Assembly: GCA_964035545.1 (NCBI GenBank)
Contig: CAXIUT010000291.1
Coordinates: 15,463 to 79,462, forward strand
DNA from: Bugula neritina
Lineage: Eukaryota > Animalia > Bryozoa
DNA: 64,000 nucleotides
Direction: 5' to 3'
Shown here: positions 42,601 through 60,191 of the stretch, in pieces
Numbering within the stretch: position 1 is the first letter of the stretch
Layout: each line of letters begins with the position of its first letter
The notes under the pieces: model-generated
The model's database searches: none
Seen by the model: the letters and a program-made list of their open reading frames with translations, nothing else
What the model was told of the DNA's origin: nothing
Made by a program: the position numbers and the translations under genes

Positions 42601-45600
42601 TGACAGGTAATCGGCCGTATTATCTTCGGTTGGTGCGTCGGCGCGTGAACTCTGACTCCAGGTGGTACCGGTGATCGGGTTTTGAATATCCTGGGCGACA
42701 AAGCGACCAGCTCCGGTGGCGGTGGGTACACGAATGGTCACCTGACCGGTCATACTGAGGTCAGGCGAAGGCGTCCGGTTCGGCGTCATAAAGACACGGT
42801 AGCGCGCATTCGCGGCATCCCAGCGAATAGTGTAGTCGAGCGCACAACTGTCGGCCTGTGCGGTCACCGTTAAGCGGTAGTCCTCGACCTCGCCATCGCT
42901 GGTTGTGGTCGTGTGATCCAGCCCCGCCGTGGTTGACCAGCGGAAGCGGGCAAAGGTCGGATTAGTGGTCGCGGAAGAGGGCGGCGTGACGTTAAAGGTA
43001 ATCGTGCCATCACTAGCGGTTGTATCGTCGGCGTTGCCATCATCCTGTAAGTCGGTGGCGACCTGTTCGCCCGCATCAAAAGCACCGTTACCATTCCAGT
43101 CAATCCAGCCCTGTAGGTAACCACCGGCACCACTCACGGTAGCGGTAATGGTTGCCACCGTACCCTGAGTTAGCGTCGGGATACTGATACCATCGTCGTC
43201 ATCCGTGCCATCGTTATCATCACCCTCTGCGCTGGGGCTGGCCTGATTGGCACTGTCAGCATCCGGCGCGGCGCTACCGAGGTAGGTGCTGCTCACGATA
43301 TTATGACTGGCTTCACCGTAACTATTGGTGCTGCTGCCATCCGGCGCTGTGCCTGATACCGGCGCATCACCATAATCCATACTACTGGTACAGGCGGCGG
43401 GTAGTTCCAGATTCTGGCAGTAGTTATTGTCATTTGCACCGCCCCAGCCCAGATTGGTGAACTGGTTACCTGGTCGGTTACCAACTGAATTCGGGGAGAT
43501 ATTAAACGGATCGCTGTCCTCGAACAGTGCTACATCACCGAGACAGGCTCCGCCATTCTCAAAGCTGAACACTTCCTGTTCAACACCGCTCTGCCAGTTA
43601 AAAGCACTGGCTGTTGAGGCTGCGAGGCTGAATGACAGGTAATCGGCCGTATTATCTTCGGTTGGCGCATCCGCCCGTGAACTCTGACTCCAGGTGGTAC
43701 CAGTGATCGGGTTTTGAATATCCTGGGCGACAAAGCGATCCGCTCCGGTGGCGGTGGGGACGCGTATGGTCACCTGACCGGTCATACTGAGGTCAGGCGA
43801 AGGCGTCCGGTTCGGCGTCATAAAGACACGGTAGCGCGCATTCGCTGCATCCCAGCGAATAGTGTAGTCGAGCGCACAACTGTCGGCCTGTGCGGTCACC
43901 GTTAAGCGGTAATCCTCGACCTCGCCATCACTGGCGGCAGTAGTACTATCCAGCCCCTGTGTCGCGGACCAGCGGAAGCGGGCAAAGGTCGGATTAGTGG
44001 TGGCGGAAGAAGGCGGCGTGACGTTAAAGGTAATCGTGCCATCGCTGGCGGTTGTATCGTCGGCGTTGCCATCATCCTGTAAATCGGTAGCGACCTGTTC
44101 GCCCGCCTCAAAAGCACCGTTACCATTCCAGTCAATCCAGCCCTGTAGGTAGCCGCCGGCACCACTAACGGTAGCGGTAATAGTAGCCACCGTATCCTGA
44201 GTTAGCGTCGGGATATTGATACCATCATCGTCATTCGTACCATCGTTGTCGTCACCCTCCGCGCTGGGGCTGGCCTGATTAGCACTGTCAGCATCCGGCG
44301 CGGCGCTACCGAGGTAGGTGCTGCTCACGATATTATGACTGGCTTCACCATAACTATTGGTGCTGCTGCCATCCGGCGCTGTGCCTGATACCGGCGCATC
44401 ACCATAATCCATGCTGCTGCTACAAGCGGCGGGTAGTTCCAGATTCTGGCAGTAGTTATTGTCATTTGCACCGCCCCAGCCCAGATTGGTGAACTGGTTA
44501 CCCGGTCGGTTACCGACTGAATTCGGGGAGATATTAAACGGATCGCTGTCCTCGAACAGTGCCACATCACCGAGACAGGCTCCGCCATTCTCAAAGCTGA
44601 ACACTTCCTGTTCGACACCGCTCTGCCAGTTAAAAGCACTGGCTGTTGAGGCCGCGAGGCTGAATGACAGGTAATCGGCCGTATTATCTTCGGTTGGTGC
44701 GTCGGCGCGTGAACTCTGGCTCCAGGTGGTACCGGTGATCGGGTTTTGAATATCCTGGGCGACAAAGCGATCCGCTCCGGTGGCGGTGGGTACACGAATG
44801 GTCACCTGACCGGTCATACTGAGGTCGGGCGAAGGCGTCCGGTTCGGCGTCATAAAGACACGGTAGCGCGCATTCGCTGCATCCCAGCGAATAGTGTAGT
44901 CGAGCGCACAACTGTCGGCCTGTGCGGTCACAGTTAAGCGGTAATCCTCGACCTCGCCATCACTGGCGGCAGTAGTACTATCCAGCCCCTGTGTCGCGGA
45001 CCAGCGGAAGCGGGCAAAGGTCGGATTAGTGGTGGTGGAAGAAGGCGGCGTGACGTTAAAGGTAATCGTGCCATCGCTGGCGGTTGTATCGTCGGCGTTG
45101 CCATCATCCTGTAAATCGGTAGCGACCTGTTCGCCCGCATCAAAGGTACCGTTACCATTCCAGTCAATCCAGCCCTGTAGGTAACCACCAGCACCACTCA
45201 CCGTAGCGGTAATAGTAGCCACCGTACCCTGAGTTAGCGTCGGGATACTGATACCATCATCATCATTCGTACCATCGTTATCATCACCCTCTGCGCTGGG
45301 GCTGGCCTGATTGGCACTGTCAGCATCCGGCGCGGCACTACCGAGATAGGTGCTACTTACGATAGTGTGACTGGCTTCACCATAACTATTAGTACTACTG
45401 CCATCCGGCGCTGTGCCTGATACCGGCGCATCACCATAATCCACGCTGCTGCTACAGGCGGCGGGTAGTTCCAGATTCTGGCAGTAGTTATTGGCGCTAA
45501 ATGCGCCCCAGCCCAAATTAGTGAACTGGTTGCCTGGTCGGTTGCCGGCTGAATTTGGGAAGACATTAAACGGATCACTGTTCTCTAGCAGTGCCACATC

Positions 45601-48600
45601 ACCGAGGCAGGCTCCGCCATTTTCGAAGCTGAACACTTCCTGTTCGACGCCGCTCTGCCAGTTAAAGGCCGCCACGTTGCTGGCCGCGAGGCTGAATGAG
45701 AGGTAATCGGCGCTGGTATCTTCGGTCGGTGCATCCGCCCGTGAACTCTGGCTCCAGGCGGTACCGGTGATCGGGTTTTGAATATCTTGTGCCACAAAGC
45801 GATCCGCTCCGGTGGCGGTGGGTACACGAATGGTCACCTGGCCGGTCATACTAAGGTCGGGTGAAGGCGTCCGGTTTGGTGTCATAAAGACACGGTAGCG
45901 CGCATTCGCTGCATCCCAGCGAATAGTGTAGTCGAGCGCACAACTGTCGGCTTGTGCGGTCACCGTTAAGCGGTAATCCTCGACCTCACCGTCACTGGCG
46001 GCAGTAGTACTATCCAGTCCCTGCGTCGCGGACCAGCGGAAGCGGGCAAAGGTCGGATTAGTGGTCGCGGAAGAGGGCGGCGTGACGTTAAAAGTAATCG
46101 TGCCATCGCTGGCGGTTGTATCGTCGGCGTTGCCATCATCCTGTAAATCGGTGGCGACCTGTTCGCCCGCCTCAAAAGCACCGTTACCATTCCAGTCAAT
46201 CCAGCCCTGTAGGTAACCACTGGCACCACTCACGGTAGCGGTAATAGTAGCCACCGTACCCTGGGTTAGGGTTGGGATACTGATACCATCATCATCATTC
46301 GTACCATCGTTGTCGTCACCGTCGGCACCGGGACTGGCCTGACTGGTGCTATCAGCATCCGGCGCAGCGCTACCGAGATAGGTGCCGCTCACGATAGTGT
46401 GACTGGCTTCACCATAACTATTAGTACTGCTGCCATCCGGCGCTGTGCCCGATACCGGCGCATCACCGTAATCCATGCTGCTGCTACAAGCGGCGGGTAG
46501 TTCGAGATTCTGACAGTAGTTATTGTCATTTGCACCGCCCCAGCCCAGATTGGTGAATTGGTTACCCGGTATTGTATTGGCTGAATTCGGGAAGACATTA
46601 AACGGATCACTGTTCGCCAGTAACGAGACATCACCGAGGCAGGCTCCGCCATTTTCGAAGCTGAATACTTCCTGCTCGACACCGGTCTGCCAGTTAAAGG
46701 CTGCCACGTTGTTGGCCGCGAGGCTGAATGAGAGGTAATCGGCCGTATTATCTTCGTTCGGTGCGTCGGTGCGTGAATTCTGACTCCAGGTGGTACCAGT
46801 GATCGGGTTTTGCAGATCCTGGGCCACAAAGCGATCAGCTCCGCTCGCGGTGGGGACGCGTATGGTTACCTGACCGGTCAGACTGAGGTCAGGCGAAGGT
46901 GTCCGGTTCGGCGTCATAAAGACACGGTAACGTGCATTCGCGGCATCCCAGCGAATAGTGTAGTCGAGCGCACAACTGGCAGCTTGTGCGATCACTGCTA
47001 AGCGGTAATCCTCCACTTCACCGTCACTGGCGGCGGTGGTGCTATCCAGCCCCTGTGTCGCGGACCAGCGGAAGCGGGCAAAGGTCGGATTAGTTGTTGC
47101 GGAAGAGGGCGGCGTGACGTTAAAGGTAATCGTGCCATCGCTGGCGGTTGTATCGTCAGCGTTGCCATCATCCTGTAAATCGGTGGCGACCTGTTCGCCC
47201 GCCTCAAAAGCACCGTTACCATTCCAGTCAATCCAGCCCTGTAGGTAACCACCGGCACCACTCACCGTAGCGGTAATAGTAGCCACCGTGCCCTGGGTTA
47301 GGGTCGGGATACTGATACCATCATCATCATTCGTACCATCGTTATCGTCACCCTCTGCGCTGGAGCTGGCCTGATTGGCACTGTCAGCATCCGGCGCGGC
47401 GCTACCGAGATAGGTGCCGCTCACGATAGTGTGACTGGCTTCACCGTAACTATTAGTACTGCTGCCATCCGGCGCTGTGCCTGATACCGGCGCATCACCG
47501 TAATCCACGCTGCTGCTACAAGCGGCGGGTAGTTCGAGATTCTGACAATAGTTATTGTCATTTGCACCGCCCCAGCCCAGATTGGTGAACTGGTTACCCG
47601 GTATTGTATTGGCTGAATTCGGGAAGACATTAAACGGATCACTGTTCGCCAGTAACGAGACATCACCGAGGCAGGCTCCGCCATTCTCGAAGCTGAATAC
47701 TTCCTGCTCGACACCGCTCTGCCAGTTAAAGGCTGCCACGTTGTTGGCCGCCAGGCTGAACGAGAGGTAATCGGCCGTATTATCTTCGTTCGGTGCGTCG
47801 GTGCGTGAATTCTGACTCCAGGTGGTACCAGTGATCGGGTTTTGCAGATCCTGGGCCACAAAGCGATCCGCTCCGCTCGCGGTGGGGACGCGTATGGTTA
47901 CCTGACCGGTCAGGCTGAGGTCAGGCGAAGGTGTCCGGTTCGGCGTCATAAAGACACGGTAACGTGCATTCGCTGCGTCCCAGCGAATAGTGTAGTCGAG
48001 TGCGCAACTGGCAGCTTGTGCGATCACTGCTAAGCGGTAATCCTCCACTTCACCGTCACTGGCGGCGGTGGTGCTATCCAGTCCCTGCGTCGCGGACCAG
48101 CGGAAGCGGGCAAAGGTCGGATTAGTGGTGGCGGAAGAGGGCGGTGTGACGTTAAAGGTAATCGTGCCATCGCTGGCGGTTGTATCGTCAGCGTTGCCAT
48201 CATCCTGTAAATCGGTGGCGACCTGTTCGCCCGCCTCAAAGGCACCGTTACCATTCCAGTCAATCCAGCCCTGTAGGTAACCACCAGCACCACTTACCGT
48301 AGCGGTAATAGTAGCCACCGTGCCCTGGGTTAGCGTCGGGATATTGATACCATCGTCATCATTCGTACCATCGTTATCGTCACCGTCGGCACCGGGACTG
48401 GCCTGACTGGTGCTATCAGCATCCGGCGCAGCGCTACCGAGATAGGTGCCGCTCACGATAGTGTGGCTGGCTTCACCGTAACTATTGGTGCTGCTGCCAT
48501 CCGGCGCTGTGCCCGATACCGGCGCATCACCGTAATCCATGCTGCTGCTACAAGCGGCGGGTAGTTCGAGATTCTGACAGTAGTTATTGTCATTTGCACC

Positions 48601-49644
48601 GCCCCAGCCCAGGTTGGTGAACTGGTTACCCGGTATTGTATTGGCTGAATTCGGGAAGACATTAAACGGATCACTGTTCGCCAGTAACGAGACATCACCG
48701 AGGCAGGCTCCGCCATTCTCGAAGCTGAATACTTCCTGCTCGACACCGGTCTGCCAGTTAAAGGCTGCCACGTTGTTGGCCGCGAGGCTGAACGAGAGGT
48801 AATCGGCCGTATTATCTTCGGTCGGTGCGTCGGTGCGTGAATTCTGGCTCCAGGTGGTACCAGTGATCGGGTTTTGCAGATCCTGTGCCACAAAGCGATC
48901 AGCTCCGCTCGCGCTGGGGACGCGTATGGTTACCTGACCGGTCAGACTGAGGTCAGGCGAAGGTGTCCGGTTCGGCGTCATAAAGACACGGTAGCGCGCA
49001 TTCGTTGCATCCCAGCGAATAGTGTAGTCGAGTGCGCAGGCATCAGCGGGAGGGGGAGGTGCGCAATTTGCAGCGCCTTCCAGGTTCGCCCGGTAATTGT
49101 TATCACCGGCCGATCCCCAGCCCAGATTGGTGAATTGATGACCGGGGCTGGTGCCGGCTGAATTTGGAAGTGTATTGAAGGGGTCATTGTCTTCGATTAA
49201 TGTTACCGCCCCCTGACAAGTTCCGCCATTTTCGAAACTGAATACTTCCTGTTCTACCCCGGCCTGCCAGCTAAAGGCCGCCGGGTTACTAACAGAGAGA
49301 CCAAAAGATAAATAATCAACGGTATTGTCTTCGTGAGGTGAATCCGCACGTGAATTCTGACTCCAGACCGTACCGGCAACTGCACTTTGGAGATCTTGTA
49401 CTATAAAACGGTCGGCCCCGGTTGCTGTGGGTACTTTTATCGTTACCTGACCGGTCATACTAAGATTAGGTGAGGGTATGCTATCGGGTACCATGAAAAC
49501 CCGATAGCGTTCATCTACTTCATCCCACCGGATAATATAATCCAGCACCGCCGCCGCTGAAGCACTTTGCGCTAATAATAAGAACAATAGTGTAGCTATA
49601 AAACGCAACGTAGAAATATTGTTGAATTTAATGAAACAAGACAT
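39664..49644 (-). CDS. 3326-aa secreted repeat protein: 9 copies of a ~165-aa beta-rich (cohesin-like?) domain alternating with 8 GEVED domains, then SdrD_B-like and DUF11-like domains
   Basis: Signal peptide ending AQSASA; repeats LDY(T/I)IRWD...GNQFTNLGWG x9; DYGDAP...WIDWNGNG...ARFR...GEVEDY x8; GRVFND.N..E.GI; PGETLRYTISYRNIG...INDAIP. Confidence 0.9.
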   Translation of the reverse strand: MSCFIKFNNISTLRFIATLLFLLLAQSASAAAVLDYIIRWDEVDERYRVFMVPDSIPSPNLSMTGQVTIKVPTATGADRFIVQDLQSAVAGTVWSQNSRADSPHEDNTVDYLSFGLSVSNPAAFSWQAGVEQEVFSFENGGTCQGAVTLIEDNDPFNTLPNSAGTSPGHQFTNLGWGSAGDNNYRANLEGAANCAPPPPADACALDYTIRWDATNARYRVFMTPNRTPSPDLSLTGQVTIRVPSASGADRFVAQDLQNPITGTTWSQNSRTDAPTEDNTADYLSFSLAANNVAAFNWQTGVEQEVFSFENGGACLGDVSLLANSDPFNVFPNSANTIPGNQFTNLGWGGANDNNYCQNLELPAACSSSMDYGDAPVSGTAPDGSSTNSYGEASHTIVSGTYLGSAAPDADSTSQASPGADGDDNDGTNDDDGINIPTLTQGTVATITATVSGAGGYLQGWIDWNGNGAFEAGEQVATDLQDDGNADDTTASDGTITFNVTPPSSATTNPTFARFRWSATQGLDSTTAASDGEVEDYRLAVIAQAASCALDYTIRWDAANARYRVFMTPNRTPSPDLSLTGQVTIRVPTASGADRFVAQDLQNPITGTTWSQNSRTDAPNEDNTADYLSFSLAANNVAAFNWQSGVEQEVFSFENGGACLGDVSLLANSDPFNVFPNSANTIPGNQFTNLGWGGANDNNYCQNLELPAACSSSVDYGDAPVSGTAPDGSSTNSYGEASHTIVSGTYLGSAAPDADSANQASSSAEGDDNDGTNDDDGISIPTLTQGTVATITATVSGAGGYLQGWIDWNGNGAFEAGEQVATDLQDDGNADDTTASDGTITFNVTPPSSATTNPTFARFRWSATQGLDSTTAASDGEVEDYRLAVIAQAASCALDYTIRWDAANARYRVFMTPNRTPSPDLSLTGQVTIRVPTASGADRFVAQDLQNPITGTTWSQNSRTDAPNEDNTADYLSFSLAANNVAAFNWQTGVEQEVFSFENGGACLGDVSLLANSDPFNVFPNSANTIPGNQFTNLGWGGANDNNYCQNLELPAACSSSMDYGDAPVSGTAPDGSSTNSYGEASHTIVSGTYLGSAAPDADSTSQASPGADGDDNDGTNDDDGISIPTLTQGTVATITATVSGASGYLQGWIDWNGNGAFEAGEQVATDLQDDGNADDTTASDGTITFNVTPPSSATTNPTFARFRWSATQGLDSTTAASDGEVEDYRLTVTAQADSCALDYTIRWDAANARYRVFMTPNRTPSPDLSMTGQVTIRVPTATGADRFVAQDIQNPITGTAWSQSSRADAPTEDTSADYLSFSLAASNVAAFNWQSGVEQEVFSFENGGACLGDVALLENSDPFNVFPNSAGNRPGNQFTNLGWGAFSANNYCQNLELPAACSSSVDYGDAPVSGTAPDGSSTNSYGEASHTIVSSTYLGSAAPDADSANQASPSAEGDDNDGTNDDDGISIPTLTQGTVATITATVSGAGGYLQGWIDWNGNGTFDAGEQVATDLQDDGNADDTTASDGTITFNVTPPSSTTTNPTFARFRWSATQGLDSTTAASDGEVEDYRLTVTAQADSCALDYTIRWDAANARYRVFMTPNRTPSPDLSMTGQVTIRVPTATGADRFVAQDIQNPITGTTWSQSSRADAPTEDNTADYLSFSLAASTASAFNWQSGVEQEVFSFENGGACLGDVALFEDSDPFNISPNSVGNRPGNQFTNLGWGGANDNNYCQNLELPAACSSSMDYGDAPVSGTAPDGSSTNSYGEASHNIVSSTYLGSAAPDADSANQASPSAEGDDNDGTNDDDGINIPTLTQDTVATITATVSGAGGYLQGWIDWNGNGAFEAGEQVATDLQDDGNADDTTASDGTITFNVTPPSSATTNPTFARFRWSATQGLDSTTAASDGEVEDYRLTVTAQADSCALDYTIRWDAANARYRVFMTPNRTPSPDLSMTGQVTIRVPTATGADRFVAQDIQNPITGTTWSQSSRADAPTEDNTADYLSFSLAASTASAFNWQSGVEQEVFSFENGGACLGDVALFEDSDPFNISPNSVGNRPGNQFTNLGWGGANDNNYCQNLELPAACTSSMDYGDAPVSGTAPDGSSTNSYGEASHNIVSSTYLGSAAPDADSANQASPSAEGDDNDGTDDDDGISIPTLTQGTVATITATVSGAGGYLQGWIDWNGNGAFDAGEQVATDLQDDGNADDTTASDGTITFNVTPPSSATTNPTFARFRWSTTAGLDHTTTTSDGEVEDYRLTVTAQADSCALDYTIRWDAANARYRVFMTPNRTPSPDLSMTGQVTIRVPTATGAGRFVAQDIQNPITGTTWSQSSRADAPTEDNTADYLSFSLAASTASAFNWQSGVEQEVFSFENGGACLGDVALFEDSDPFNISPNSVGNRPGNQFTNLGWGGANDNNYCQNLELPAACTSSMDYGDAPVSGTAPDGSSTNSYGEASHNIVSSTYLGSAAPDADSANQASPSAEGDDNDGTDDDDGISIPTLTQGTVATITATVSGAGGYLQGWIDWNGNGTFEAGEQVATDLQDDGNADDTTASDGTITFNVTPPSSTTTNPTFARFRWSTTAGLDHTTTTSDGEVEDYSLRVFEVQPAGCELDYTIRWDDVNRRYRVFMTPNSVPSPDLSSTGQVTIRVPTATGISQFIPQDIQSSITGTAWSFDSRQDAPPEDTSVDYLSFSLAASNAAAFNWQTGVEQEVFSFENTGACLGQVALIENSDPFNVLPNSAGTRPANQFTNFGWGGVDDNNYCRNLEVPAVCTIITDYGDAPVSGSAPNGSNTNTYGAASHAIISSIYLGSTTPDADSANQASPNADGDDSDGANDDNGINIPTLTQGKSADITATVNGANGYLQGWIDFNGDGDFTDSGEQIAIDLQDGDTDGSITIPVTVPLNAITNPTFARFRWSTTAGLDHTTAANDGEVEDYMLTVEPGGFNVGGRVFNDSNANTNNDATEAGIGGVAIVLYDTNSNTCISTRTNANGDYLFTRVLPGDYQVYEAAGESAPNPQHCDPANARDPSGYLSTTANNSVTFTVSNTHVSGLNFGDIKPPAFELDNEQTILPNSAILHPHIFTAQSDGSVSFTIAAENANPTTLNWGRQLLLDANCDGRLSSANGDSAMPASINVTAGQRVCVLVKVVSPPNATTGAMHVIDIQSDFSYGDDSLGLTNNRQIHQNITRSLAGTTTAPPVDPVVDPVGTPDPVAGEGKLALVKSVWNVTRNIDGNVVLPGETLRYTISYRNIGNGPLNELVINDAIPAFTEIVQGSMLCTDKPAELPLCTTNENPDGSLDWAWTVNDKLNPGSSGTVSYQVTVE
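40830..49040 (-). repeat. Tandem array with 1032-bp (344-aa) period
   Basis: GCGAATAGTGTAGTCGAG recurs at ~41790, 42825, 43855, 44887, 45919, 46951, 47983 and 49015. Confidence 0.97.
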
Positions 49645-49794: not shown

Positions 49795-50394
49795 CTACGA
49801 ACAGCTAAGCGCTGCGCCGTAATTGCCGAGGTAATTATTACTTTCCACTGTGCCCCAGCCAATATTAGTGAACTGGTTACCCGGACGCGTACCGGCTGAA
49901 TTGTCTGGCACATTAAACGGGTCATCATCATCCATCAGGCGGACATCCGACACACAACCCCCCGAATTACGGAAAGAAAATATCAGTTTTTCCTCGTCCG
50001 CCTCCCATTGGTAGAAGTTGGCGTCACCCGTTAGGCCGACATAGGAGAAGGAAATATAATCGTATTCAGGATTTTCTTCCGGTGCGTCCACACGCGCCGT
50101 TTCCACCCAGCTGGCATCGCCGACATAGTTTTGTACGTCTTCCGCCTGGAACAGGCTATCACCGGGAACCCGGATAGTTAGCTGGCCGGTAAGGCTAAGG
50201 TCGGGTTTCGGTAGTACCGTTGGTTTCATCCAGACCTCATATGTTTCGCCATCATCCGCCAGCGCCAGTTTGTACTCAAGTACCTGTTCGCTGTCGTCTG
50301 CGTTATCCGTTGCGCTGGCTGTACCTATACAACAAGCCAGTAATACACCACCAGCCAGTGGCAGTGTTTGAGGTATAAATTTGGCTATTTTCAT
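49795..50394 (-). CDS. Small secreted protein: a single stand-alone copy of the domain repeated in the 3326-aa protein
   Basis: Signal peptide; LEY...YEVWMKP..PDLSLTGQLTIRVP...RVDAPEEN..DYISF...FSFRNSGGC...DPFN...GNQFTNIGWG aligns by eye along its full length. Confidence 0.9.
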   Translation of the reverse strand: MKIAKFIPQTLPLAGGVLLACCIGTASATDNADDSEQVLEYKLALADDGETYEVWMKPTVLPKPDLSLTGQLTIRVPGDSLFQAEDVQNYVGDASWVETARVDAPEENPEYDYISFSYVGLTGDANFYQWEADEEKLIFSFRNSGGCVSDVRLMDDDDPFNVPDNSAGTRPGNQFTNIGWGTVESNNYLGNYGAALSCS

Positions 50395-50511: not shown

Positions 50512-53500
50512 TTAAGGAGTCACTATTTGGTCCATACCTCCGATTAGAATAAAGTTAGCTGCAAAGACACTATTATTTGGATGTAACAAGACATTAGCTA
50601 ACATAATGTTAATATCATTGTCCGCACCGGCAAATATTGTCATACCATCCATGTTGAGGTCAGTACTAAGGTAACCATGCAGTACGTAGTTGGAGTTAAA
50701 GTACGCTGCGTTACCCGGCGCTGTTAGTACATTACCCAGCACACTGTTCGCATCATTACTGACACCGTAAGCAATGGCAGTTTGATCCTGGTTAGCATCT
50801 CCGGCCCACATGAGTCTAATGCTACCCGCTTCCAGTCGCGCCGGATTCGCTGTGCTATCGCCCATTGCCTGTGTAGTTGGCAACGTGAAATCAACCATCG
50901 TGGTGGTAGCGCTCAGACTAACCGGGTTTTCCGTCATCACACCCGGATGGTTCCGGTGGCGTACGCTAACGTGGTAATCAGCATCCGCGACACCGTAGAA
51001 CGTGATAGTGTCATCACCCGTAGCCGCATTCGCCAGATCACCATCGCGTTGTACCATGACCGCGTAACTGGCTTCGATGGTCGTTGGGTCGGCCGCATTA
51101 CGCAGTTCCAGCAACACCCAATCCACGACATCATCTTCTATATAAGCCGCGTCGGCGACTACCGCCGTACTGAGGGTCTCGGTTCCATCATGACCAAAGG
51201 GTGCTTCGCCATACGGATGCGCCGTCGGTAACAGCTCGCTGGTACGTAGCGTATCATTCATTAGGCCAAGACTGCTGTCGTAGGCCCCCTGTAGATAAGT
51301 ACGCACCTGGAGCTTAACCATTGCTGCGCCGGCAAGCGGAGTCACAATGTCATTGTAGCCATCAGCCGGAGCTACATCTGTTGGCACCGCAAGGGTTTCA
51401 TCAGATTCATCACCGTTGTTAATACCATCGTTATCATAGTCCAGGCTACCATCCGGCGTTCCGTCGGTTGTTTCCGGGTCTAACGGATCGGTACCGACTA
51501 ATGCTTCGTCCGCGTCACTAACGCCGTCGCCGTCGTCATCGGTATCGGTCGCATCCGGTATTCCGTCATTATCGAAATCATTATCCATATAATCCGGAAC
51601 ACCATCACCGTCGGCATCAGGACAGGTATAACCATTCGGACATTCAGCATCGTCATCGACACCATCGCCATCCGCATCACCCGCGCCCGCTGTTTCATCA
51701 TTCGGGTCAAGGTGCGCCGGGATACCGTCGCCATCGTTGTCTTTCCAGATACCGGTTTCCACGCCACCCTGCTCGCCGCCGGTACCATCAGTACCTTCAC
51801 CGTCGCCATCAGCGTTGTCGTCGTTGTGATCCGTCGCGCCGTCACCATCGGTGTCGAGTATGTTGGATTCCAGACGATCCGGGATACCATCGTTATCGGT
51901 ATCGGTCGTACCTTCCGTTGCATCCGGCGTACCGTCACCGTCGGAGTCAGTATCCATGTAATCCGGGATACCATCGCCATCGGAGTCAGGACAGATATAG
52001 CCATTCGGACATTCAACGTCGTCGTCGATACCGTCGCCATCCGCATCACCCATACCCGCTGTTTCATCATTCGGGTCAAGGTGCGCCGGGATACCGTCGC
52101 CATCGTTGTCTTTCCAGGGGCCTTCTAACACACCGGCCTGTTCGCCGCCGGTACCATCTGTACCTTCGCTATCGCCGTCAGCATCGTTGTCGTCGAAATC
52201 GAAGTAACCATCACCATCGGTGTCGAGTATGTTGGATTCCAGTCGATCCGGAATACCGTCACCGTCTTCGTCGGTGGTGCCTTCGTCTACATCTGAGATG
52301 CCATCGTTATCGTCGTCGGTGTCGGTTATATCCGGAATGCCGTCGCCGTCACTGTCGATGAGATCCGGTGTATCCATGTAATCCGGGATACCATCACCAT
52401 CGGAGTCAGGACAGGTATAGCCATTCGGACATTCAACGTCGTCGTTGATACCATCGCCATCCGCATCACCCGCGCCAGCCGTGTTGTCATTCGGGTCAAG
52501 GTGCGCCGGGATACCATCGCCATCGTTGTCGTTCCAAACACCGGTTTCCACGCCATCCTGCTCGCCGCCGGTACCATCAGTACCTTCACCGTCGCCATCA
52601 GCGTTGTCGTCGTTGTAATCCTTCGCGCCGTCACCATCGGTGTCGAGTATGTTGGATTCCAGACGATCCGGGATACCATCGTTATCGGTATCGGTCGTAC
52701 CTTCCGTTGCATCCGGCGTACCGTCACCGTCGGAGTCAGTATCCATGTAATCCGGGATACCATCGCCATCGGAGTCAGGACAGATATAGCCATTCGGACA
52801 TTCAACGTCGTCGTCGATACCGTCGCCATCCGCATCACCCATACCCGCTGTTGCATCATTCGGGTCAAGGTGCGCCGGGATACCGTCGCCATCGTTGTCG
52901 TTCCAGATACCGGTTTCTACGCTATTCTGCTCGCCGCCGGTACCATCAGTACCTTCGCTGTCGCCATCAGCGTTGTCGTCGTTGTAATCCATCGCGTTGT
53001 CACCATCGGTGTCGAGTATGTTGGATTCCAGACGATCCGGGATACCATCGTTATCGGTATCGGTCGTACCTTCCGTTGCATCTAATATACCGTCACCGTC
53101 GGAGTCAGTATCCATGTAATCCGGGATACCATCACCATCGGAGTCAGGGCAGATGTAACCATTCGGACATTCAACGTCGTCGTCGATACCGTCGCCATCC
53201 GCATCACCCATACCCGCTGTTGCATCATTCGGGTCAAGGTGCGCCGGGATACCGTCGCCATCGTTGTCGTTCCAGGGGCCTTCTAACACACCGTCCTGTT
53301 CGCCGCCGGTACCATCCGTACCTTCGCTATCGCCGTCAGCATCGTTGTCGTCGAAATCGAAGTTACCATCACCGTCGGTGTCGAGTATGTTGGATTCCAG
53401 TCGATCCGGAATACCGTCGCCATCGGTGTCGGTGGTGCCTTCGTCTACATCTGAGATGCCATCGTTATCGTCGTCGGGGTCGGTTATATCCGGAATGCCG

Positions 53501-56500
53501 TCGCCGTCACTGTCGATGAGATCCGGTGCATCCATGTAATCCGGGACACCATCACCATCGGAGTCAGGACAGATATAGCCATTCGGACATTCAACGTCGT
53601 CGTTGATACCATCGCCATCCGCATCACCCGCGCCAGCCGTGTCGTCATTCGGGTCAAGGTGCGCCGGGATACCGTCGCCATCGTTGTCGTTCCAGGGGCC
53701 TTCTAAAACACCGTCCTGTTCGCCGTTATTGCCATTATCACCATCGTCTCCTTCAATGTCACCGTCAGCATTGCTGTCGTTGAAATCGAAGTTACCGTCA
53801 CCGTCGGTGTCGATAATGTTGGATTCAATGCGATCCGGAATACCGTCACTATCGGTGTCGGTGGTGCCTTCGTCTACATCTGAGATGCCATCGTTATCGT
53901 CGTCGGGGTCGGTTGCGTCCGGAATGCCGTCGCCGTCACTGTCGACATTAGCTCCACCCCGGAAATCAACTTCGGGGCTGTAGGCGTCAACATTAAGTAA
54001 GCCGTCGCTGCTGCCCAGCGGATCATTCACACTGCCATCAGGATCAGCATAGGTCGGCGCGGTCGCTACGGCGCTTCCGCCTTCGTCGGCGTCGGATATA
54101 CCGTCACCATCGCTGTCCGGATCCAAATAGTCGGGCGTCGTATCAGCCGTGTCGTTGGCATCGGCGTTGGCCGTGTTGGCCCCTGCGATAAAGGCGTTGT
54201 TCGATTCGCCGGTTGCAAAGCCAACGCCAGCGGTAGCGGTATCGTAGATATCAAGGATACCGTCATCGTCGCTGTCGGCGGCGTCATCGGTGCCAGCGTA
54301 AGCGACGTAATAAGTCGATGCGCGAGCTTCGGTCGCATCGCCGATACCATCATCGTCACTATCCAAGTCGAGATAGTCAGCCAGATCGTCACCAGCCGTG
54401 TTGAAGCTGTCAACGGGGGCTGTACCGATAGAGTCGGCAGCTGTATTTCCAGTTGAGATGTCAGCATCAAAGATATCCATCAGGCCATCGCCATCGGCAT
54501 CAGCAACACCGCCATTGGCAGCGGCAGCTTCAGCAGCGGAGATTGTCCCGTCGTTGTTGGTGTCGGCTGCGATTAGAGCCGCCGTTGCACCACTTTCAAC
54601 CAGGTCGCTGATTCCGTCGTTGTCACTGTCGAGATCCTCATGGTTGCTGATACCGTCACCATCGGTGTCAAGAAACCCTGCTGAACTACCAGAGCTACTA
54701 CTGCTACTACTACTGCCGCTACCACTACTCAGGCCATAGTCCTGGTCAGTAAAAGTCTCAATGACCTGACCACCAAAATTCATGTGTATCCCTGAGAGCA
54801 ATACCGTCGGCATACCGAGTAGTTCGTAGTTCCCATTCCCGTCCGTTACCAAGGCAAAAGTATCGTAATGTGATTGAATTGCACCAATCAAATCAGGCGT
54901 GGTAAAAGAAGAGACGTCTAATGAAACCGCATCATTATTGATAAACAGCTGGTCATTTGTGTAGTCAGCACGCATCAGATATGCTGATGTTATACCTGTA
55001 TCAATGTCTTCAATGTCTGTTCCGGCTATGTGCAACGTGGCATCGGTACCAGCGCTATTAGCCGTGAATGTATTGCCAGCCGAATCAAGAATAAAGGGGG
55101 GGCCTTGTACTGGATTAACAATATCAACAGCTGTACCGCTGAAGTTAGGATCGGTTATCACGAGCTGGGTAACGGGAATTGGGGCTGCGGTGGCATTAGA
55201 TAGCCACGTCCAAAGCGTACCGTCGTCTTTTAACGCGATAGCCCGCTGGGTATACGGATAGGCGCTAAAATTGTCGCTGATTTGAACGACACCCGAGCCC
55301 AAGCCCGTAAACTCAGCCACTGTGCCAGTCGAATCAACGGGTGCAGTATAGACCGTGCCATCTGCTCGGAAAGCGTAAAAACTCCCAGTCCCGCCACCAC
55401 CAGAAACCGAGACGAAGTCTTTATTCTCCGCTCCAGTGTATAGTGCTGCCGCATCTGTTCCAATGGTAGTGGAGGTCATTGGAAGGCGCATGATTCGGCC
55501 ATCATCTAACAAGAGCGCGGCATTGCCGTGGTCTGCGGTAACAGACGTGACCTTGGCGCCGGTTGGGATCCCAATAATTGGCACGGGATTACCAGCGGGG
55601 TCTCTTATCACACGACCATATAAGTTGCCATCGGTACCGATCATGAGTGCATGAGATTCAATCGAAAAGAAGGTCTCAAAGGTGATCCCATTACTGGCCG
55701 AATTGGTCCAGTCAGCCGTCGTAACTCTGTCCCTGAATCGGGTTATCGTACCGTCGGTCATGAGGACAACGTGCCCCTCTCGTCCGTCTTCAGCATAAGC
55801 GCCTGCATTCGGCCCCATTAATGCGGTAAAAATGTCACTGGCATTTATTTCGGAAGGTGCCTCTACACTATCCAGAATCCCATCGTTGTCAGCGTCGATG
55901 TCGCTGGCGTCGGGAACGCCGTCGCCGTCGGAGTCGGCTACGCTACGGAAATCAACTTCGGCGCTGTCGGCGTCAACATTAAGTAAGCCGTCGCTGCCGC
56001 CCAGCGGATCATTCACACTTCCATCAGGATCAGCATAGGTCGGCGCGGTCGCTACGGCGCTTCCGCCTTCGTCGGCGTCGGTTATGCCGTCACCATCGCT
56101 GTCCGGATCCAAATAGTCGGGCGTCGTATCAGCCGTGTCGTTGGCATCGGCGTTGGCCGTGTTGGCCCCGGCGATAAAGGCGTTGTTCGATTCGCCGGTT
56201 GCAAAGCCAACGCCAGCGGTAGCGGTATCGTAGATATCAAGGATACCATCATCGTCGCTGTCGGCCGCGTCATCGGTGCCAGCGTAAGCGACGTAATAAG
56301 TCGATGCGCGAGCTTCGGTCGCATCGCCGATACCATCATCGTCACTATCCAAGTCGAGATAGTCAGCCAGATCGTCACCAGCTGTGTTGAAGCTGTCAAC
56401 GGGGGCTGTACCGATAGAGTCGGCAGCTGTATTTCCAGTCGAGATGTCAGCATCAAAGATATCCATCAGGCCATCGCCATCGGCATCAGCAACACCGCCA

Positions 56501-59500
56501 TTGGCAGCGGCAGCTTCAGCAGCGGAGATTGTCCCGTCGTTGTTGGTGTCGGCTGCGATTAGAGCCGCCGTTGCACCACTTTCAACCAGGTCGCTGATTC
56601 CGTCGTTGTCACTGTCGAGATCCTCATGGTTGCTGATACCGTCACCATCGGTGTCAAGAAACGCTGCTGAACTACCAGAGCTGCTACTACCACTACCGCT
56701 ACCTCCGCTCAGGCCATAGTCCTGGTCGGTAAAAGTCTCAATGACCTGACCACCAAAATTCATGTGTATCCCTGAGAGCAATACCGTCGGCATACCGAGT
56801 AGTTCGTAGTTCCCATTCCCGTCCGTTACCAAGGCAAAAGTATCGTAATGTGATTGAATTGCACCAATCAAATCAGGCGTGGTAAAAGAAGAGACGTCTA
56901 ATGAAACCGCATCATTATTGATAAACAGCTGGTCATTTGTGTAGTCAGCACGCATCAGATATGCTGATGTTATACCTGTATCAATGTCTTCAATGTCTGT
57001 TCCGGCTATGTGCAACGTGGCATCGGTACCAGCGCTATTAGCCGTGAATGTATTGCCAGCCGAATCAAGAATAAAGGGGGGGCCTTGTACTGGATTAACA
57101 ATATCAACAGCTGTACCGCTGAAGTTAGGATCGGTTATCACGAGCTGGGTAACGGGAATTGGGGCTGCGGTGGCATTAGATAGCCACGTCCAAAGCGTAC
57201 CGTCGTCTTTTAACGCGATAGCCCGCTGGGTATACGGATAGGCGCTAAAATTGTCGCTGATTTGAACGACACCCGAGCCCAAGCCCGTAAACTCAGCCAC
57301 TGTGCCAGTCGAATCAACGGGTGCAGTATAGACTGTGCCATCTGCTCGGAAAGCGTAAAAACTCCCAGTCCCGCCACCACCAGAAACCGAGACGAAGTCT
57401 TTATTCTCCGTTCCAGTGTATAGTGCTGCCGCATCTGTTCCAATGGTAGTGGAGGTCATTGGAAGGCGCATGATTCGGCCATCATCTAACAAGAGCGCGG
57501 CATTGCCGTGGTCTGCGGTAACAGACGTGACCTTGGCACCGGTTGGGACCCCAATAATTGGCACGGGATTACAACTGGGTCTCTTATCACACGACCATAT
57601 AAGTTGCCATCGGTACCGATCATGAGTGCATGAGATTCAATCGAAAAGAAGGTCTCAAAGGTGATCCCATTACTGGCCGAATTGGTCCAGTCAGGCCGTC
57701 GTAACTCTGTCCCTGAATCGGGTTATCGTACCGTCGGTCATGAGGACAACGTGCCCGTCTCGTCCGTCTTCAGCATAAGCGCCTGCATTCGGCCCCATTA
57801 ATGCGGTAAAAATGTCACTGGCATTTATTTCGGAAGGTGCCTCTACACTATCCAGAATCCCATCGTTGTCAGCGTCGATGTCGCTGGCGTCGGGAACGCC
57901 GTCGCCGTCGGAGTCGGCTACGCTACGGAAATCAACTTCGGCGCTGTCGGCGTCAACATTAAGTAAGCCGTCGCTGCCGCCCAGCGGATCATTCACACTG
58001 CCATCAGGATCAGCATAGGTCGGCGCGGTCGCTACGGCGCTTCCGCCTTCGTCGGCGTCGGACACGCCGTCACCATCGCTGTCCAGATCCAAATAGTCGG
58101 GCGTCGAATCAGCCGTGTCGTTGGCATCGGCGTTGGCCATGTTGGCCCCGGCAATAAAGGCGTTGTTCGATTCACCGGTTGCAAAGCCAACTCCGGCGGT
58201 AGCGGTATCGTAGATATCAAGGATACCGTCATCGTCGCTGTCGGCGGCGTCATCGGTGCCAGCGTAGGCGACGTAGTCGGTTGAAGCGCGAGCTTCGGTC
58301 GCATCGCCGATACCGTCGTTGTCGCTATCTAGGTCGAGGTAATCAGGCGTGCCATCGGCCACCGTTTCACTATCGACCGGAGCGGTTCCAATTGATGCGG
58401 CATCTGAACTGTCTGCTTTGTCAGCATCGAACAGATCCATCAAGCCATCGCCGTCGGCGTCGGCAACGCCTGTTCCGCCATTAGCCAGATCATAGGCTAT
58501 AGCTTCAGCATCGGAGATTGTCCCGTCGTGGTTGGTGTCAGCTGCGATTTGAGCCGCCGTTGCACCACTTTCAACCAGGTCGCTGATCCCGTCGTTGTCA
58601 CTGTCCAGGTCAGCATGGTTGCTGATGCCGTCACCATCGGTGTCAAGGAAGCCTGCTGAACTAACAGAGCTGCTACTGCCGCTGCTACCGCTACCGCTGC
58701 TTAGGTCATAGTCCTGATCGGTAAAGGTCAGAAGGACCTGATCAGGAATAATATGTGCCGATGAAAGACCCAGCGTTCCTATGCCGAGTAGTTCGTAGTT
58801 CCCATTACCGTCCGTTACCACGGCCAGCGTATCTGAATGGAGTTGAATGGCACCGACCAAATCGGGCGTACTGAAAGAAGATATGGCTAGTGAAACCGTC
58901 GTCTCATCAACGAAAAGCTGGTCATTGGTGTAGTCAGCACGCAACAGAAATCGTGTGTGACCCATGTCAATGTCTTCAATGCCTGTACCGGCTATGTGCA
59001 ACGTGGCATCGGTACCAGCAAGATTAACCTCAAACGTATTACCAGCCGAATCAAGAACATACACAGTCCCGGTTGTTGTGGCCGTAACATCAACCACCGG
59101 ACCGCTGAAGTTAGTATCGGTGACCGTGAGCTGAGTAGCGGTAATTGGCTGTGAAGTAGCGGTAGGATCCCATGTGAAAACAGTACCGTCATCTTTTAAT
59201 GCGACAGCTCTACCTCTGGTAGCATCAGTAATTTTCGTAACACCCGAACCCAGGGTTGTAAACTCCTCCACTGTGCCTGTTGTAGTAGCGGGTGCTGTAT
59301 AAACCGTGCCATCTGCCCGGAAGGCATAGAAATTCCATTCACGCCACCACCAGCAACAGAGACGAACCCTGTATTATCCGCTCCGTTATACAGTGCCGCT
59401 GGTGCATTAGAGACATTGAAGGGTAGTGGAAGGCGCATCATTCGACCATCATCTAGCAAGAGCGCGGCATTTTTGTCGTCAGCGGTAACCGAAACGACCC

Positions 59501-60191
59501 TGGTGCCAGTTGGAATCCCTGTAACGACAGTGAAGCGAGCAGCATTCATTCCTATTTCATGGTAATAAAAATTTCCATCGCTACCATTCGCGAATACGTG
59601 AGCTTCATGTGAAAAGACGTCTTCAAAGGTAATCCCATTAGTGGCCGAATTAGTCCAGTCAGTAATTACAGACTGTACCACCACTCGCGTTAGCTCGCCG
59701 TTGGGCGTGCGGAAGACAATTCCTGCGGCACCGTCTTCACCATAAACGCCTGCATTCGCTCCCATTAATGCGGTAAAAATTGCATTGGCATCCGGAGCGG
59801 CCGGAGCCTCTGTACTATCCAAAATACCGTCGTTGTCAGCGTCGATGTCGCTGGCGTCGGGAACGCCGTCGCCGTCGGAGTCGGTACTATTAGCCTCTGC
59901 CGCCGGTACCAACGTTTCCAGAATACCCACATAACGCGAATGAAACCCGGAAGAAGAATCAAATAAACCACCCGCCGCTGTTAGCGACAACATCATAACG
60001 AATACAATGCCGAAAAAAGACGCTAAGATGGAGGAGAGTCCGGGCGGACTCCCGGTTCGTCGCCTTTTTCGCTCTCTTGATACTCTATTGAAAGGCGGGG
60101 ATGCCTGCTGTGGGTGAGAATATGACTGAGTGTTATCCGGGGTTGTATCGTGACCGCCCATAGGAATGTGTGATTTTTCTCGTTGGCTCAT
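50512..60191 (-). CDS. ~3200-aa surface protein split into three ORFs by frameshifts: three 660-aa modules, Asp-rich Ca-binding (TSP3-like) repeats, C-terminal beta domain plus dockerin-like module
   Basis: ORFs 59196-60191, 57691-59271 and 50512-57564 join through indels at ~59340, ~57694 and ~57572, seen by comparison with the intact repeat copy; many DxDxDGIPD motifs; C-terminal GDANQD and DLNMDG loops. Confidence 0.85.
51500..53945 (-). repeat. Six Asp/Gly-rich units of ~369 or ~420 bp, each containing ECPNGY(I/T)CPD
   Basis: CATTCGGACATTCA recurs at ~51634, 52002, 52422, 52791, 53160 and 53580. Confidence 0.9.
53960..59890 (-). repeat. Three copies of a ~1980-bp (660-aa) module; two near-identical, one divergent
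   Basis: For example 55004 vs 56984 and 55832 vs 57812 give identical shadow ORFs 1980 bp apart. Confidence 0.93.

What the first reader, a model, noticed from the sequence alone, without database searches (positions are those of the whole stretch)
50512..51321. C-terminal X-module plus dockerin-like duplication with elongated Ca loops
Seen: a ~170-aa beta-rich segment (KLQVRTYLQGAY...DWVLLELR...VRHRNH) followed by two similar segments, DANQDQTAIAYGVSND-ANSVLGNVL..PGN and DLNMDGMTIFAGADND-INIMLANVL..PNN. Each has D1-x-N3-x-D5 with the closing Asp at position 16 rather than the canonical 12, followed by an amphipathic helix. Known: dockerins are duplicated Ca-loop plus helix units, and atypical types with insertions exist. 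Inference: a divergent dockerin type, possibly also acting as an export or anchoring tag, since no RTX nonapeptides, autotransporter barrel or PEP-CTERM are visible.
Basis: partly seen in the sequence, partly recalled or inferred. Interest (0 to 1): 0.7.

Follow-up and report, generated by a model that had tools for sequence, protein, structure and literature searches.

The report
Divergent X-dockerin-like docking module
The last 265 residues of a giant secreted calcium-binding protein from a Thiothrix-like sulfur bacterium are predicted to fold like the X-module plus dockerin unit that holds cellulosomes together, and this unannotated but widespread module always travels with a second unknown 165-residue domain that may be its receptor.

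Summary
Window 50512-51321 (minus strand) encodes the C-terminus of a giant TSP3-repeat protein. No Pfam, NCBIfam or PDB sequence match exists. HMMER finds 8805 cluster representatives (E<=0.001); in 140 of the best 150 the module ends within 12 residues of the C-terminus. An alignment-based AlphaFold2 model (pLDDT 96.3) has solved type II X-dockerin units as its only strong structural matches: eight entries at Z 7.9-9.2, with 146-149 of about 156 residues aligned, against 5.3 for the next fold. The two Ca-loop/helix units are a true duplication (hhalign E 7e-19). D1, N3, D5 and an acidic residue at position 16 are conserved in both.

Classic cohesins are absent from these genomes. Instead, a 165-aa domain co-occurs with the full-length module in every genome set searched, in two phyla. 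It is present as the adjacent small gene and as nine copies in the next giant gene, is syntenic elsewhere, and is fused to the module in 36 of 150 proteins. Complex prediction gives only weak support (0.49; best control 0.28). Ca binding, docking and the partner are inferred. A first-reader note on this same window (s1-437818) proposed the same system.

The parts
50512..57564 (-). Open frame of 2350 codons plus stop. It is the C-terminal part of a giant secreted TSP3-repeat (Asp-rich, Ca-binding type) protein. The gene really starts at about 60191 but is broken into three frames.
   Evidence: (TSP3_bac E 2.5e-07).
50809..51324 (-). X-module-like part of the C-terminal module (residues 3-174 of window:50515-51330:-). 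An N-terminal strand and a long loop (LQGAY...LP..HPY) are followed by an Ig/transthyretin-like beta-sandwich. Nearly invariant residues are W71, E75, R77, Q94, D96, G97 and H125-R-N-H128.
   Evidence: Weak Y_Y_Y (Ig-like) hits in 22 of 126 members.
50530..50808 (-). Dockerin-like part (residues 175-267): two ~46-residue units, each a 16-residue putative Ca loop plus a helix.
50752..50799 (-). Putative Ca loop 1, DANQDQTAIAYGVSND (residues 178-193). The helix follows at 193-202.
50614..50661 (-). Putative Ca loop 2, DLNMDGMTIFAGADND (residues 224-239). The helix follows at 239-248.
49795..50394 (-). Small secreted protein (199 aa): a Sec signal peptide plus one copy of an unannotated 165-aa domain (motif NPGNQFTNLGWG, conserved Cys pair). 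It is the candidate receptor of the module.
39664..49644 (-). 3326-aa secreted protein with a signal peptide. It holds nine copies of the 165-aa domain (period 1032 bp) interleaved with GEVED domains, and has an SdrD_B/DUF11-type C-terminus. It is a candidate multi-site scaffold.

Best explanation
The last ~265 residues form one rigid two-part module. An Ig-like beta-sandwich, equivalent to a cellulosomal X-module, is packed against a duplicated loop-helix domain, equivalent to a type II dockerin. The two putative Ca-binding loops are 16 residues long instead of 12.

The module is the common C-terminal end of many large Sec-exported surface proteins in Thiothrix-like Gammaproteobacteria and some Bacteroidota. 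It most likely works as a Ca-dependent protein-protein docking plug. The likeliest socket is not a classic cohesin. It is the unannotated 165-aa domain encoded immediately downstream, as a small secreted protein and as nine copies in the next giant protein.

If so, this three-gene unit would hang the TSP3-repeat giant on a multi-site scaffold, as enzymes hang on a scaffoldin.

Shown: the family, the internal duplication, the conserved ligand pattern, the predicted fold, the co-occurrence, the synteny and the fusions. Inferred: Ca binding, docking, and the identity of the partner.
For: Fold: model pLDDT 96.3. XDoc entries are the only strong matches, covering nearly the whole XDoc unit (Z 7.9-9.2 against 5.3 for the next fold). 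In the ESM Atlas the model has TM 0.83-0.86 to Bacteroidota clusters, and TM 0.71-0.72 to clusters whose members carry Pfam Cohesin or Dockerin_1.

Motif: duplication E 7e-19. D1/N3/D5/D16 are conserved in both loops.

Module behaviour: in 140 of the 150 best hits the module ends within 12 residues of the C-terminus. There are 6-25 copies per Thiothrix/Thiofilum genome, each at the end of a large ORF. Sec signal peptides are present on members.

Partner:
- The same 31 of 61 relatives of Thiothrix caldifontis have both domains.
- In a 301-genome sample of Gammaproteobacteria, the 165-aa domain is in exactly the 3 genomes that have the full-length module.
- In a 301-genome sample of Bacteroidota, it is in only 2 genomes. 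These are the two with the best full-length module hits, and the genes are adjacent there.
- The gene order (module-ending gene, then small 165-aa protein, then a gene starting with the 165-aa domain) recurs in G001, G003, G004, G010 and G320. G337 has a shorter form of the order without the small protein: module-ending gene, then a gene that starts with the 165-aa domain.
- 36 of 150 module proteins also contain the 165-aa domain, and in 8 it is fused directly to the module.

Complex prediction gave weak support: ipSAE 0.49 in three runs, best of 3 controls 0.28. The runs agree in at least 98% of contacts, and the partner's pLDDT is at least 87. The mark was reached by 51 of 78 solved complexes and 2 of 108 mismatched pairs. 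At 0.60 or under, however, it was reached by only 5 of those 78 solved complexes and by all 4 mismatches that passed.
Against: - There is no sequence-level match to Dockerin_1 or EF-hand models. Profile against two real gammaproteobacterial dockerins is not significant (probability below 10%).
- The 165-aa domain shows no profile similarity to cohesins (hhalign probability 0.2%), and I could not determine its fold.
- The complex score is in the range where passes are more often wrong than right unless the guess was already likely.
- Co-occurrence in related genomes is partly phylogenetic inertia.
- 41 of 43 Bacteroidota genomes with divergent or partial forms of the module lack a detectable 165-aa domain.
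- The beta-sandwich part carries nearly invariant polar residues (E75, R77, D96, HRNH 125-128) and occurs without the dockerin-like part in many Bacteroidota proteins. It may therefore have a function of its own that this model does not explain.
- In this genome the gene is interrupted by frame breaks upstream.
Confidence: 0.55

Rival explanations
1. The module anchors the protein to a non-protein component of the cell surface, such as sheath or capsule polysaccharide or LPS. On this reading it is a Ca-dependent lectin or 'hemagglutinin'-type binding module, and the 165-aa domain is simply another passenger domain of the same surface proteins.
For: One Flavobacteriales member is named 'hemagglutinin protein' by NCBI. 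The beta-sandwich part has a nearly invariant polar cluster that would suit a ligand site. The beta-sandwich occurs alone in many Bacteroidota proteins. Most Bacteroidota genomes with the module lack the 165-aa domain.
Against: The name has no model behind it: there is no NCBIfam or Pfam hit. The only strong structural match is a protein-protein docking unit. The tight cross-phylum adjacency and fusion with the 165-aa domain is not explained.
Confidence: 0.2
2. The module is a C-terminal sorting or export signal. A dedicated outer-membrane secretion or attachment machinery would recognise it, as with the T9SS C-terminal domain or PEP-CTERM. It would not be a docking plug.
For: The module is at the extreme C-terminus in 140 of 150 proteins. 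There are many cargo proteins of unrelated architecture per genome.
Against: Dockerins show the same C-terminal, many-per-genome pattern. There is no match to any known sorting-signal model in NCBIfam or Pfam. No secretion or sortase-like gene sits in the conserved cassette or next to it in the window. At 265 well-folded residues with Ca-type loops, it is much larger than known sorting tags. Some proteins are signal peptide plus module only (P0055, P0092).
Confidence: 0.15
3. The module is only a Ca-dependent folding cap or stabiliser for long Asp-rich repeat proteins and has no specific partner.
For: It follows Ca-binding TSP3 repeats here. Putative Ca loops are present.
Against: It ends proteins of many other architectures: cadherin, beta-helix, SdrD_B, FN3, CAP. 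It also exists alone behind a signal peptide. Neither fact fits a mere cap for repeats. The linkage to the 165-aa domain is unexplained.
Confidence: 0.1

Closest known systems
Type II X-module-dockerin (XDoc) units of cellulosomal scaffoldins: Clostridium thermocellum CipA/CipB and Acetivibrio cellulolyticus ScaA (PDB 2b59, 3kcp, 4fl4, 5g5d, 5m0y, 5k39, 4u3s, 4wi0)
   Same: An Ig-like beta-sandwich is packed rigidly against a duplicated Ca-loop/helix domain at the C-terminus of a large secreted modular protein. 146-149 of ~156 XDoc residues superpose on the model (Z 7.9-9.2). The module is present on many proteins per genome, and some carrier proteins also hold several copies of the putative receptor domain, like scaffoldins.
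   Different: - 16-20% identity, and no hit to Pfam Dockerin_1.
- 265 residues instead of ~156.
- An N-terminal extension of about 60 residues.
- Loops of 16 rather than 12 residues, with a conserved G-P-x-N-D insertion.
- Hosts are Gram-negative, aerobic or sulfur-oxidising, and non-cellulolytic.
- No Pfam cohesin was found in the five genomes searched for it (G000-G004).
- The carrier proteins are adhesin-like, not glycoside hydrolases.
- The beta-sandwich is far more conserved than a spacer would need to be.
Non-cellulosomal dockerin- and cohesin-like modules scattered through bacteria and archaea. One example is the dockerin-like and cohesin-like ORFs noted in Saccharophagus degradans (PMC2386152). 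Another is the highly divergent ruminococcal cellulosome modules found only by structure prediction (PMC13463774, abstract).
   Same: Dockerin-type modules occur outside classical cellulosomes, and their divergence can defeat sequence models.
   Different: Those cases are recognisable as Dockerin_1 or Cohesin by sequence or by fold, and pair with cohesins. Here the classic cohesin is absent, and gammaproteobacterial genomes that do have a Pfam cohesin lack this module (0 of 11).
EF-hand / F-hand Ca-binding loop pairs
   Same: Acidic or amide side chains at loop positions 1, 3 and 5, an acidic residue at the start of the exiting helix, and two loops that each contribute a short strand.
   Different: The loop is four residues longer than the canonical one. 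No EF-hand model matches this region.

Membership tests
Dockerin (Pfam PF00404 Dockerin_1) | Significant match to the family's sequence model | tested here: not met
   hmmscan at E<=1 gives no hit for the window's C-terminus. Only 1 of 126 relatives hits, at E 0.043. hhalign against two real dockerins gives probability below 10%.
Dockerin (Pfam PF00404 Dockerin_1) | Tandem duplication of a Ca-loop plus helix segment | tested here: met
   Unit 1 against unit 2 gives hhalign probability 99.1%, E 7e-19. Helices at 193-202 and 239-248 follow the loops. The units are ~46 residues long rather than ~22.
Dockerin (Pfam PF00404 Dockerin_1) | 12-residue EF-hand-like loop with ligands at positions 1, 3, 5, 9 and 12 | tested here: not met
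   Positions 1, 3 and 5 are conserved, but the closing acidic residue is at position 16, after a conserved I-x-x-G-P-x-N insertion.
Dockerin (Pfam PF00404 Dockerin_1) | Binds Ca2+ and needs it to fold | not testable with these tools
   Only the ligand pattern is seen.
Type II X-dockerin unit | Ig-like X-module immediately N-terminal of the dockerin and packed against it as one rigid unit | tested here: met
   A predicted model, not an experimental structure. The whole XDoc unit superposes (146-149 of ~156 residues, rmsd 3.4-4.1, Z 7.9-9.2), well above the next fold at 5.3.
Type II X-dockerin unit | Partner is a cohesin module in the same organism | tested here: not met
   Pfam Cohesin finds nothing in G000-G004. 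The candidate partner domain has no profile similarity to cohesins, and its fold is unknown.
Known C-terminal sorting or secretion signals (T9SS CTD, PEP-CTERM and relatives, RTX/T1SS target domains, autotransporter barrel) | Match to the curated NCBIfam or Pfam models of these signals | tested here: not met
   NCBIfam gives 0 families at E<=1. Pfam gives 0 for the window's module; among 126 relatives Por_Secre_tail hits 1 at E 0.066. Members have N-terminal Sec signal peptides, which argues against T1SS.

The most novel reading that the evidence does not exclude
This would be a cohesin-independent docking system. An X-dockerin-like plug with 16-residue Ca loops pairs with a new 165-aa receptor domain. 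Together they build cellulosome-style assemblies of giant Ca-binding adhesins on a nine-site scaffold plus a free single-site protein. The system would occur on sulfur-oxidising Thiotrichaceae, and the plug-socket cassette would have moved between Gammaproteobacteria and Bacteroidota.
Probability: 0.4. Interest if true: 0.8.

Novelty: new variant of a known kind. Interest (0 to 1): 0.62.

Why it matters
Cohesin-dockerin pairing is the textbook example of modular extracellular protein assembly and a workhorse of synthetic biology. It is known almost only from anaerobic cellulolytic Firmicutes.

This module has thousands of database representatives, no Pfam or NCBIfam model, and only 'hypothetical' or borrowed names. 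It would extend the X-dockerin architecture to Gram-negative, non-cellulolytic bacteria.

It also comes with a concrete, testable candidate for a new kind of socket. That would give a new orthogonal plug-socket pair, and a handle on how filamentous sulfur bacteria and symbionts build their surface matrix or attach to hosts.

Tried and rejected
- Single-sequence AlphaFold2 gave an unusable model (pLDDT 34).
- Sequence and profile searches of the module against PDB found nothing meaningful.
- The search for related loci with the alignment failed for lack of a conserved 7-10-column stretch. The single protein worked.
- A weak Pfam Cohesin hit in the neighbouring giant protein (E 0.0026, 18.4 bits against a cutoff of 24.1) lies between the 165-aa copies and next to a GEVED domain. 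Whole-genome search with the Cohesin model found nothing, so I dropped it.
- The idea that the 165-aa domain is a sequence-detectable cohesin is rejected (hhalign probability 0.2%).
- The idea that the small protein is a lipoprotein anchor is rejected. The window copy has an L-L-A-C stretch, but the orthologues have plain signal-peptidase-I sites.
- The NCBI name 'cadherin' for the small protein has no model support. True cadherin domains occur in other carriers of the module.
- T1SS export is rejected because members have Sec signal peptides.
- Literature searches found no description of the module.
Full report
WHAT IS THERE

The finding lies on the minus strand. It is the C-terminal 269 codons of an open frame running 57564..50512 (2350 codons). 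The body of that frame is Asp-rich. It has three long repeats, then Cys-containing units of about 110 residues of the thrombospondin type 3 kind (Pfam TSP3_bac E 2.5e-07).

The gene is really longer. The frame 59271..57691 carries the same repeat and ends in '...RFRDRVTTA*'. That sequence continues, after a frame change, into the start of the main frame. Compared with the internal repeat copy there is one extra C near 57694 and one missing G near 57568, so about 115 bases are out of frame. A third frame, 60191..59196, supplies an N-terminus with a basic stretch and a hydrophobic segment.

The assembly has 216 Mb in 321 contigs. The window is a bacterial contig within it, and its closest relatives are Thiothrix, Thiofilum and related Gammaproteobacteria.

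The last 272 residues (window:50515-51330:-) match nothing in Pfam, NCBIfam or the PDB by sequence. They do match 8805 representatives of 50%-identity clusters at E<=0.001, and 1121 at E<=1e-30. In 140 of the best 150, the match ends within 12 residues of the protein's C-terminus, in proteins of 250 to 6200 residues.

An alignment of 126 members (A2) shows conserved blocks:
- LQGAY, M..D.LR and LP..QPY
- VDWVLVELR, QRDGD and YYV..RHRNHLGV
- then two similar units, WAGD.N.D...IA.GP.ND....L..VL....N and TD.NMDG.T.F.GP.ND.N.L..NVL.HP.N

Profile against profile, the two units align at probability 99.1%, E 7e-19. Positions 1, 3 and 5 of each loop, and the acidic residue at position 16, are conserved in nearly all members. 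G12 and N15 are also nearly invariant.

THE FOLD

A single-sequence prediction failed (pLDDT 34). With alignment A2, AlphaFold2 gives pLDDT 96.3 and pTM 0.93. The model has:
- a first strand and a long loop;
- a beta-sandwich up to about residue 174;
- two loop/short-strand/helix units, with helices at 193-202 and 239-248.

Foldseek's best PDB matches are type II X-dockerin chains (8 of the 11 best rows, probability 0.97-1.00, E 1.5e-03 to 1.4e-02). An independent alignment against 48,161 representative chains puts 3kcp_A (CipA X-dockerin, residues 155-310) at Z 9.1, rmsd 3.4 with 147 residues aligned, and 5g5d_B at Z 8.3. The next fold is at 5.4. A second look lists eight XDoc entries at Z 7.9-9.2, each with 146-149 of about 156 residues aligned across model residues 2-269, and then drops to 5.3. 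So both domains and their mutual packing resemble the XDoc unit.

In the ESM Atlas the model matches Bacteroidota clusters at TM 0.83-0.86 (rmsd 1.5-2.5 over ~250 residues). It matches clusters in which 11-84% of members carry Pfam Cohesin or Dockerin_1 at TM 0.71-0.72.

This is a predicted model. The tool's own caution is that Z around 8-9 can be a common arrangement. Here the match stands well above the background and covers a whole two-domain unit.

WHAT IT IS NOT

- The Dockerin_1 model does not see it. There are 0 hits for the window, and 1 of 126 relatives hits at E 0.043.
- Profile against two genuine gammaproteobacterial dockerins is not significant. Those alignments do, however, place a four-residue gap exactly inside the loop.
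- No sorting-signal, RTX or autotransporter model matches.
- Several complete members start with ordinary Sec signal peptides. Two are signal peptide plus module only (P0055, P0092). This speaks against type I secretion.
- The flanking genes in the window are housekeeping genes, not secretion genes.

DISTRIBUTION

Thiothrix, Thiofilum and related genomes have 6-25 copies, each at the end of a large ORF. Thirty-one of 61 relatives of Thiothrix caldifontis have the module. Only 3 of 301 sampled Gammaproteobacteria have the full module.

Named carriers are called after their other domains: cadherin domain-containing, SdrD B-like, or beta-helix repeat proteins. The family also occurs in Bacteroidota, including Spirosoma, Runella, Saprospiraceae and Flavobacteriales. 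There it is called 'hypothetical' or, once, 'hemagglutinin protein', and it is again C-terminal. In a sample of 301 Bacteroidota genomes, 43 have it, often in divergent form or as the beta-sandwich alone.

A CANDIDATE SOCKET

Directly downstream lies a 199-aa secreted protein (50394..49795). Its 165-aa domain recurs nine times in the next gene, a 3326-aa secreted protein (49644..39664). There the copies have a 1032-bp period and are interleaved with GEVED domains, and the first copy follows the signal peptide directly. This domain has no Pfam, NCBIfam or PDB match.

It tracks the module closely:
- The same 31 of 61 Thiothrix relatives have both.
- In the Gammaproteobacteria sample it is in exactly the three genomes with the full module. 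It is absent from the one genome that has only the beta-sandwich part.
- In the Bacteroidota sample it is in only two genomes, G337 (Spirosoma foliorum) and G540. These are the two with the best full-length module matches, and the genes are adjacent there.
- The order 'gene ending in the module, then small 165-aa protein, then gene beginning with the 165-aa domain' recurs in G001, G003, G004, G010 and G320. G337 shows the order without the small protein: a module-ending gene followed by a gene that begins with the 165-aa domain.
- Of the 150 best module proteins, 36 also contain the domain. In 8 it is fused directly in front of the module, and in many it sits at the N-terminus.

Classic cohesins are not involved. 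Pfam Cohesin finds nothing in the window's assembly or the four related genomes searched (G000-G004). The 11 of 301 sampled Gammaproteobacteria that do have cohesins lack the module.

The 165-aa domain has no profile similarity to cohesins (probability 0.2%).

A complex prediction of the module with the small protein and two Ca ions gave weak support. The details are:
- ipSAE was 0.49 in all three runs; the best of three controls was 0.28.
- The runs agree in at least 98% of contacts, and the partner's pLDDT is at least 87.
- The mark was reached by 51 of 78 solved complexes and 2 of 108 mismatched pairs.
- At 0.60 or under, however, it was reached by only 5 of those 78 solved complexes and by all 4 mismatches that passed.

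HOW IT MOST LIKELY WORKS

Shown:
- a conserved, duplicated, Ca-loop-like C-terminal module with a predicted XDoc fold;
- Sec-type export of its carriers;
- tight genomic coupling to a second unknown domain.

Inferred:
- The loops bind Ca.
- The module docks its carrier onto the 165-aa domain.
- Proteins with several such domains act as scaffolds.
- Proteins with an N-terminal 165-aa domain and a C-terminal module could chain head to tail.
- The free small protein could cap or compete.

In this window the system is minimal. There is one plug, the only copy found in the assembly, and ten sockets.

I put the docking reading at about 0.55. Within that, the 165-aa domain as partner is at roughly 0.45 overall.

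Rivals are a glycan-binding anchor (0.2), a sorting signal (0.15) and a mere folding cap (0.1).

One unexplained feature weighs against a pure 'spacer' X-module. The beta-sandwich carries nearly invariant polar residues (E75, R77, Q94, D96, H125-R-N-H128) and occurs alone in many Bacteroidota proteins.

COMPARISON AND NOVELTY

The module works like, and is predicted to look like, a type II X-dockerin. It fails sequence membership, has 16-residue loops and about 100 extra residues, sits in Gram-negative non-cellulolytic bacteria on adhesin-like carriers, and lacks a cohesin partner.

Dockerin-like modules outside cellulosomes are known (PMC2386152). Structure prediction has recently uncovered highly divergent ones (PMC13463774, abstract). 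I found no description of this family. I file it as a new variant of a known kind.

A first-reader note on this same window (s1-437818) proposed the same system.

Noticed in passing
window 57565-57700 and 59196-59271: The giant gene is split into three frames. Relative to its own internal repeat copy there is one extra C near 57694 and one missing G near 57568, which puts a TGA in frame between them. A further frame change lies where ORFs 59196..60191 and 57691..59271 overlap. These may be assembly errors or gene decay.
   Followed up: partly
whole window / G000: The assembly is 216 Mb in 321 contigs, but this contig (C300) is bacterial and closest to Thiothrix/Thiofilum. It is therefore a symbiont, epibiont or contaminant contig inside a eukaryote-sized assembly.
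   Followed up: partly
window 50940-51120 (residues 71-128 of the module): There is a nearly invariant polar cluster in the beta-sandwich: W71, E75, R77, Q94, D96, G97 and H125-R-N-H128. It is conserved also in Bacteroidota members and in proteins that have the sandwich without the dockerin-like part. It looks like a ligand or metal site, or a buried network. No explanation so far.
   Followed up: no
window 39664-49644: The 3326-aa protein has a 1032-bp repeat period. Each unit is a 165-aa domain plus a GEVED domain. The C-terminus has SdrD_B and DUF11/DUF7927-type domains. A sub-threshold Pfam Cohesin hit (E 0.0026) lies at residues 1463-1510, between copies.
   Followed up: partly
window 31326-32546 and 36415-37839: Two paralogous AAA_14 + DUF4143 ATPase genes flank a fused MFS-acyltransferase-AMP-binding gene (32685-36131).
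   Followed up: no
G290:C1:1614514-1615032 and 1626340-1626858: A gammaproteobacterial genome has two identical-scoring copies of the beta-sandwich part only (profile positions 24-181). It has no dockerin-like part and no 165-aa domain.
   Followed up: no
P0108, P0278, P0281, P0282; P0072; P0320: Short carriers of the module combine it with CAP (PF00188), sulfatase (PF00884) or subtilase (PF00082) domains. So some cargo proteins are enzymes or CAP-type proteins rather than adhesins.
   Followed up: no
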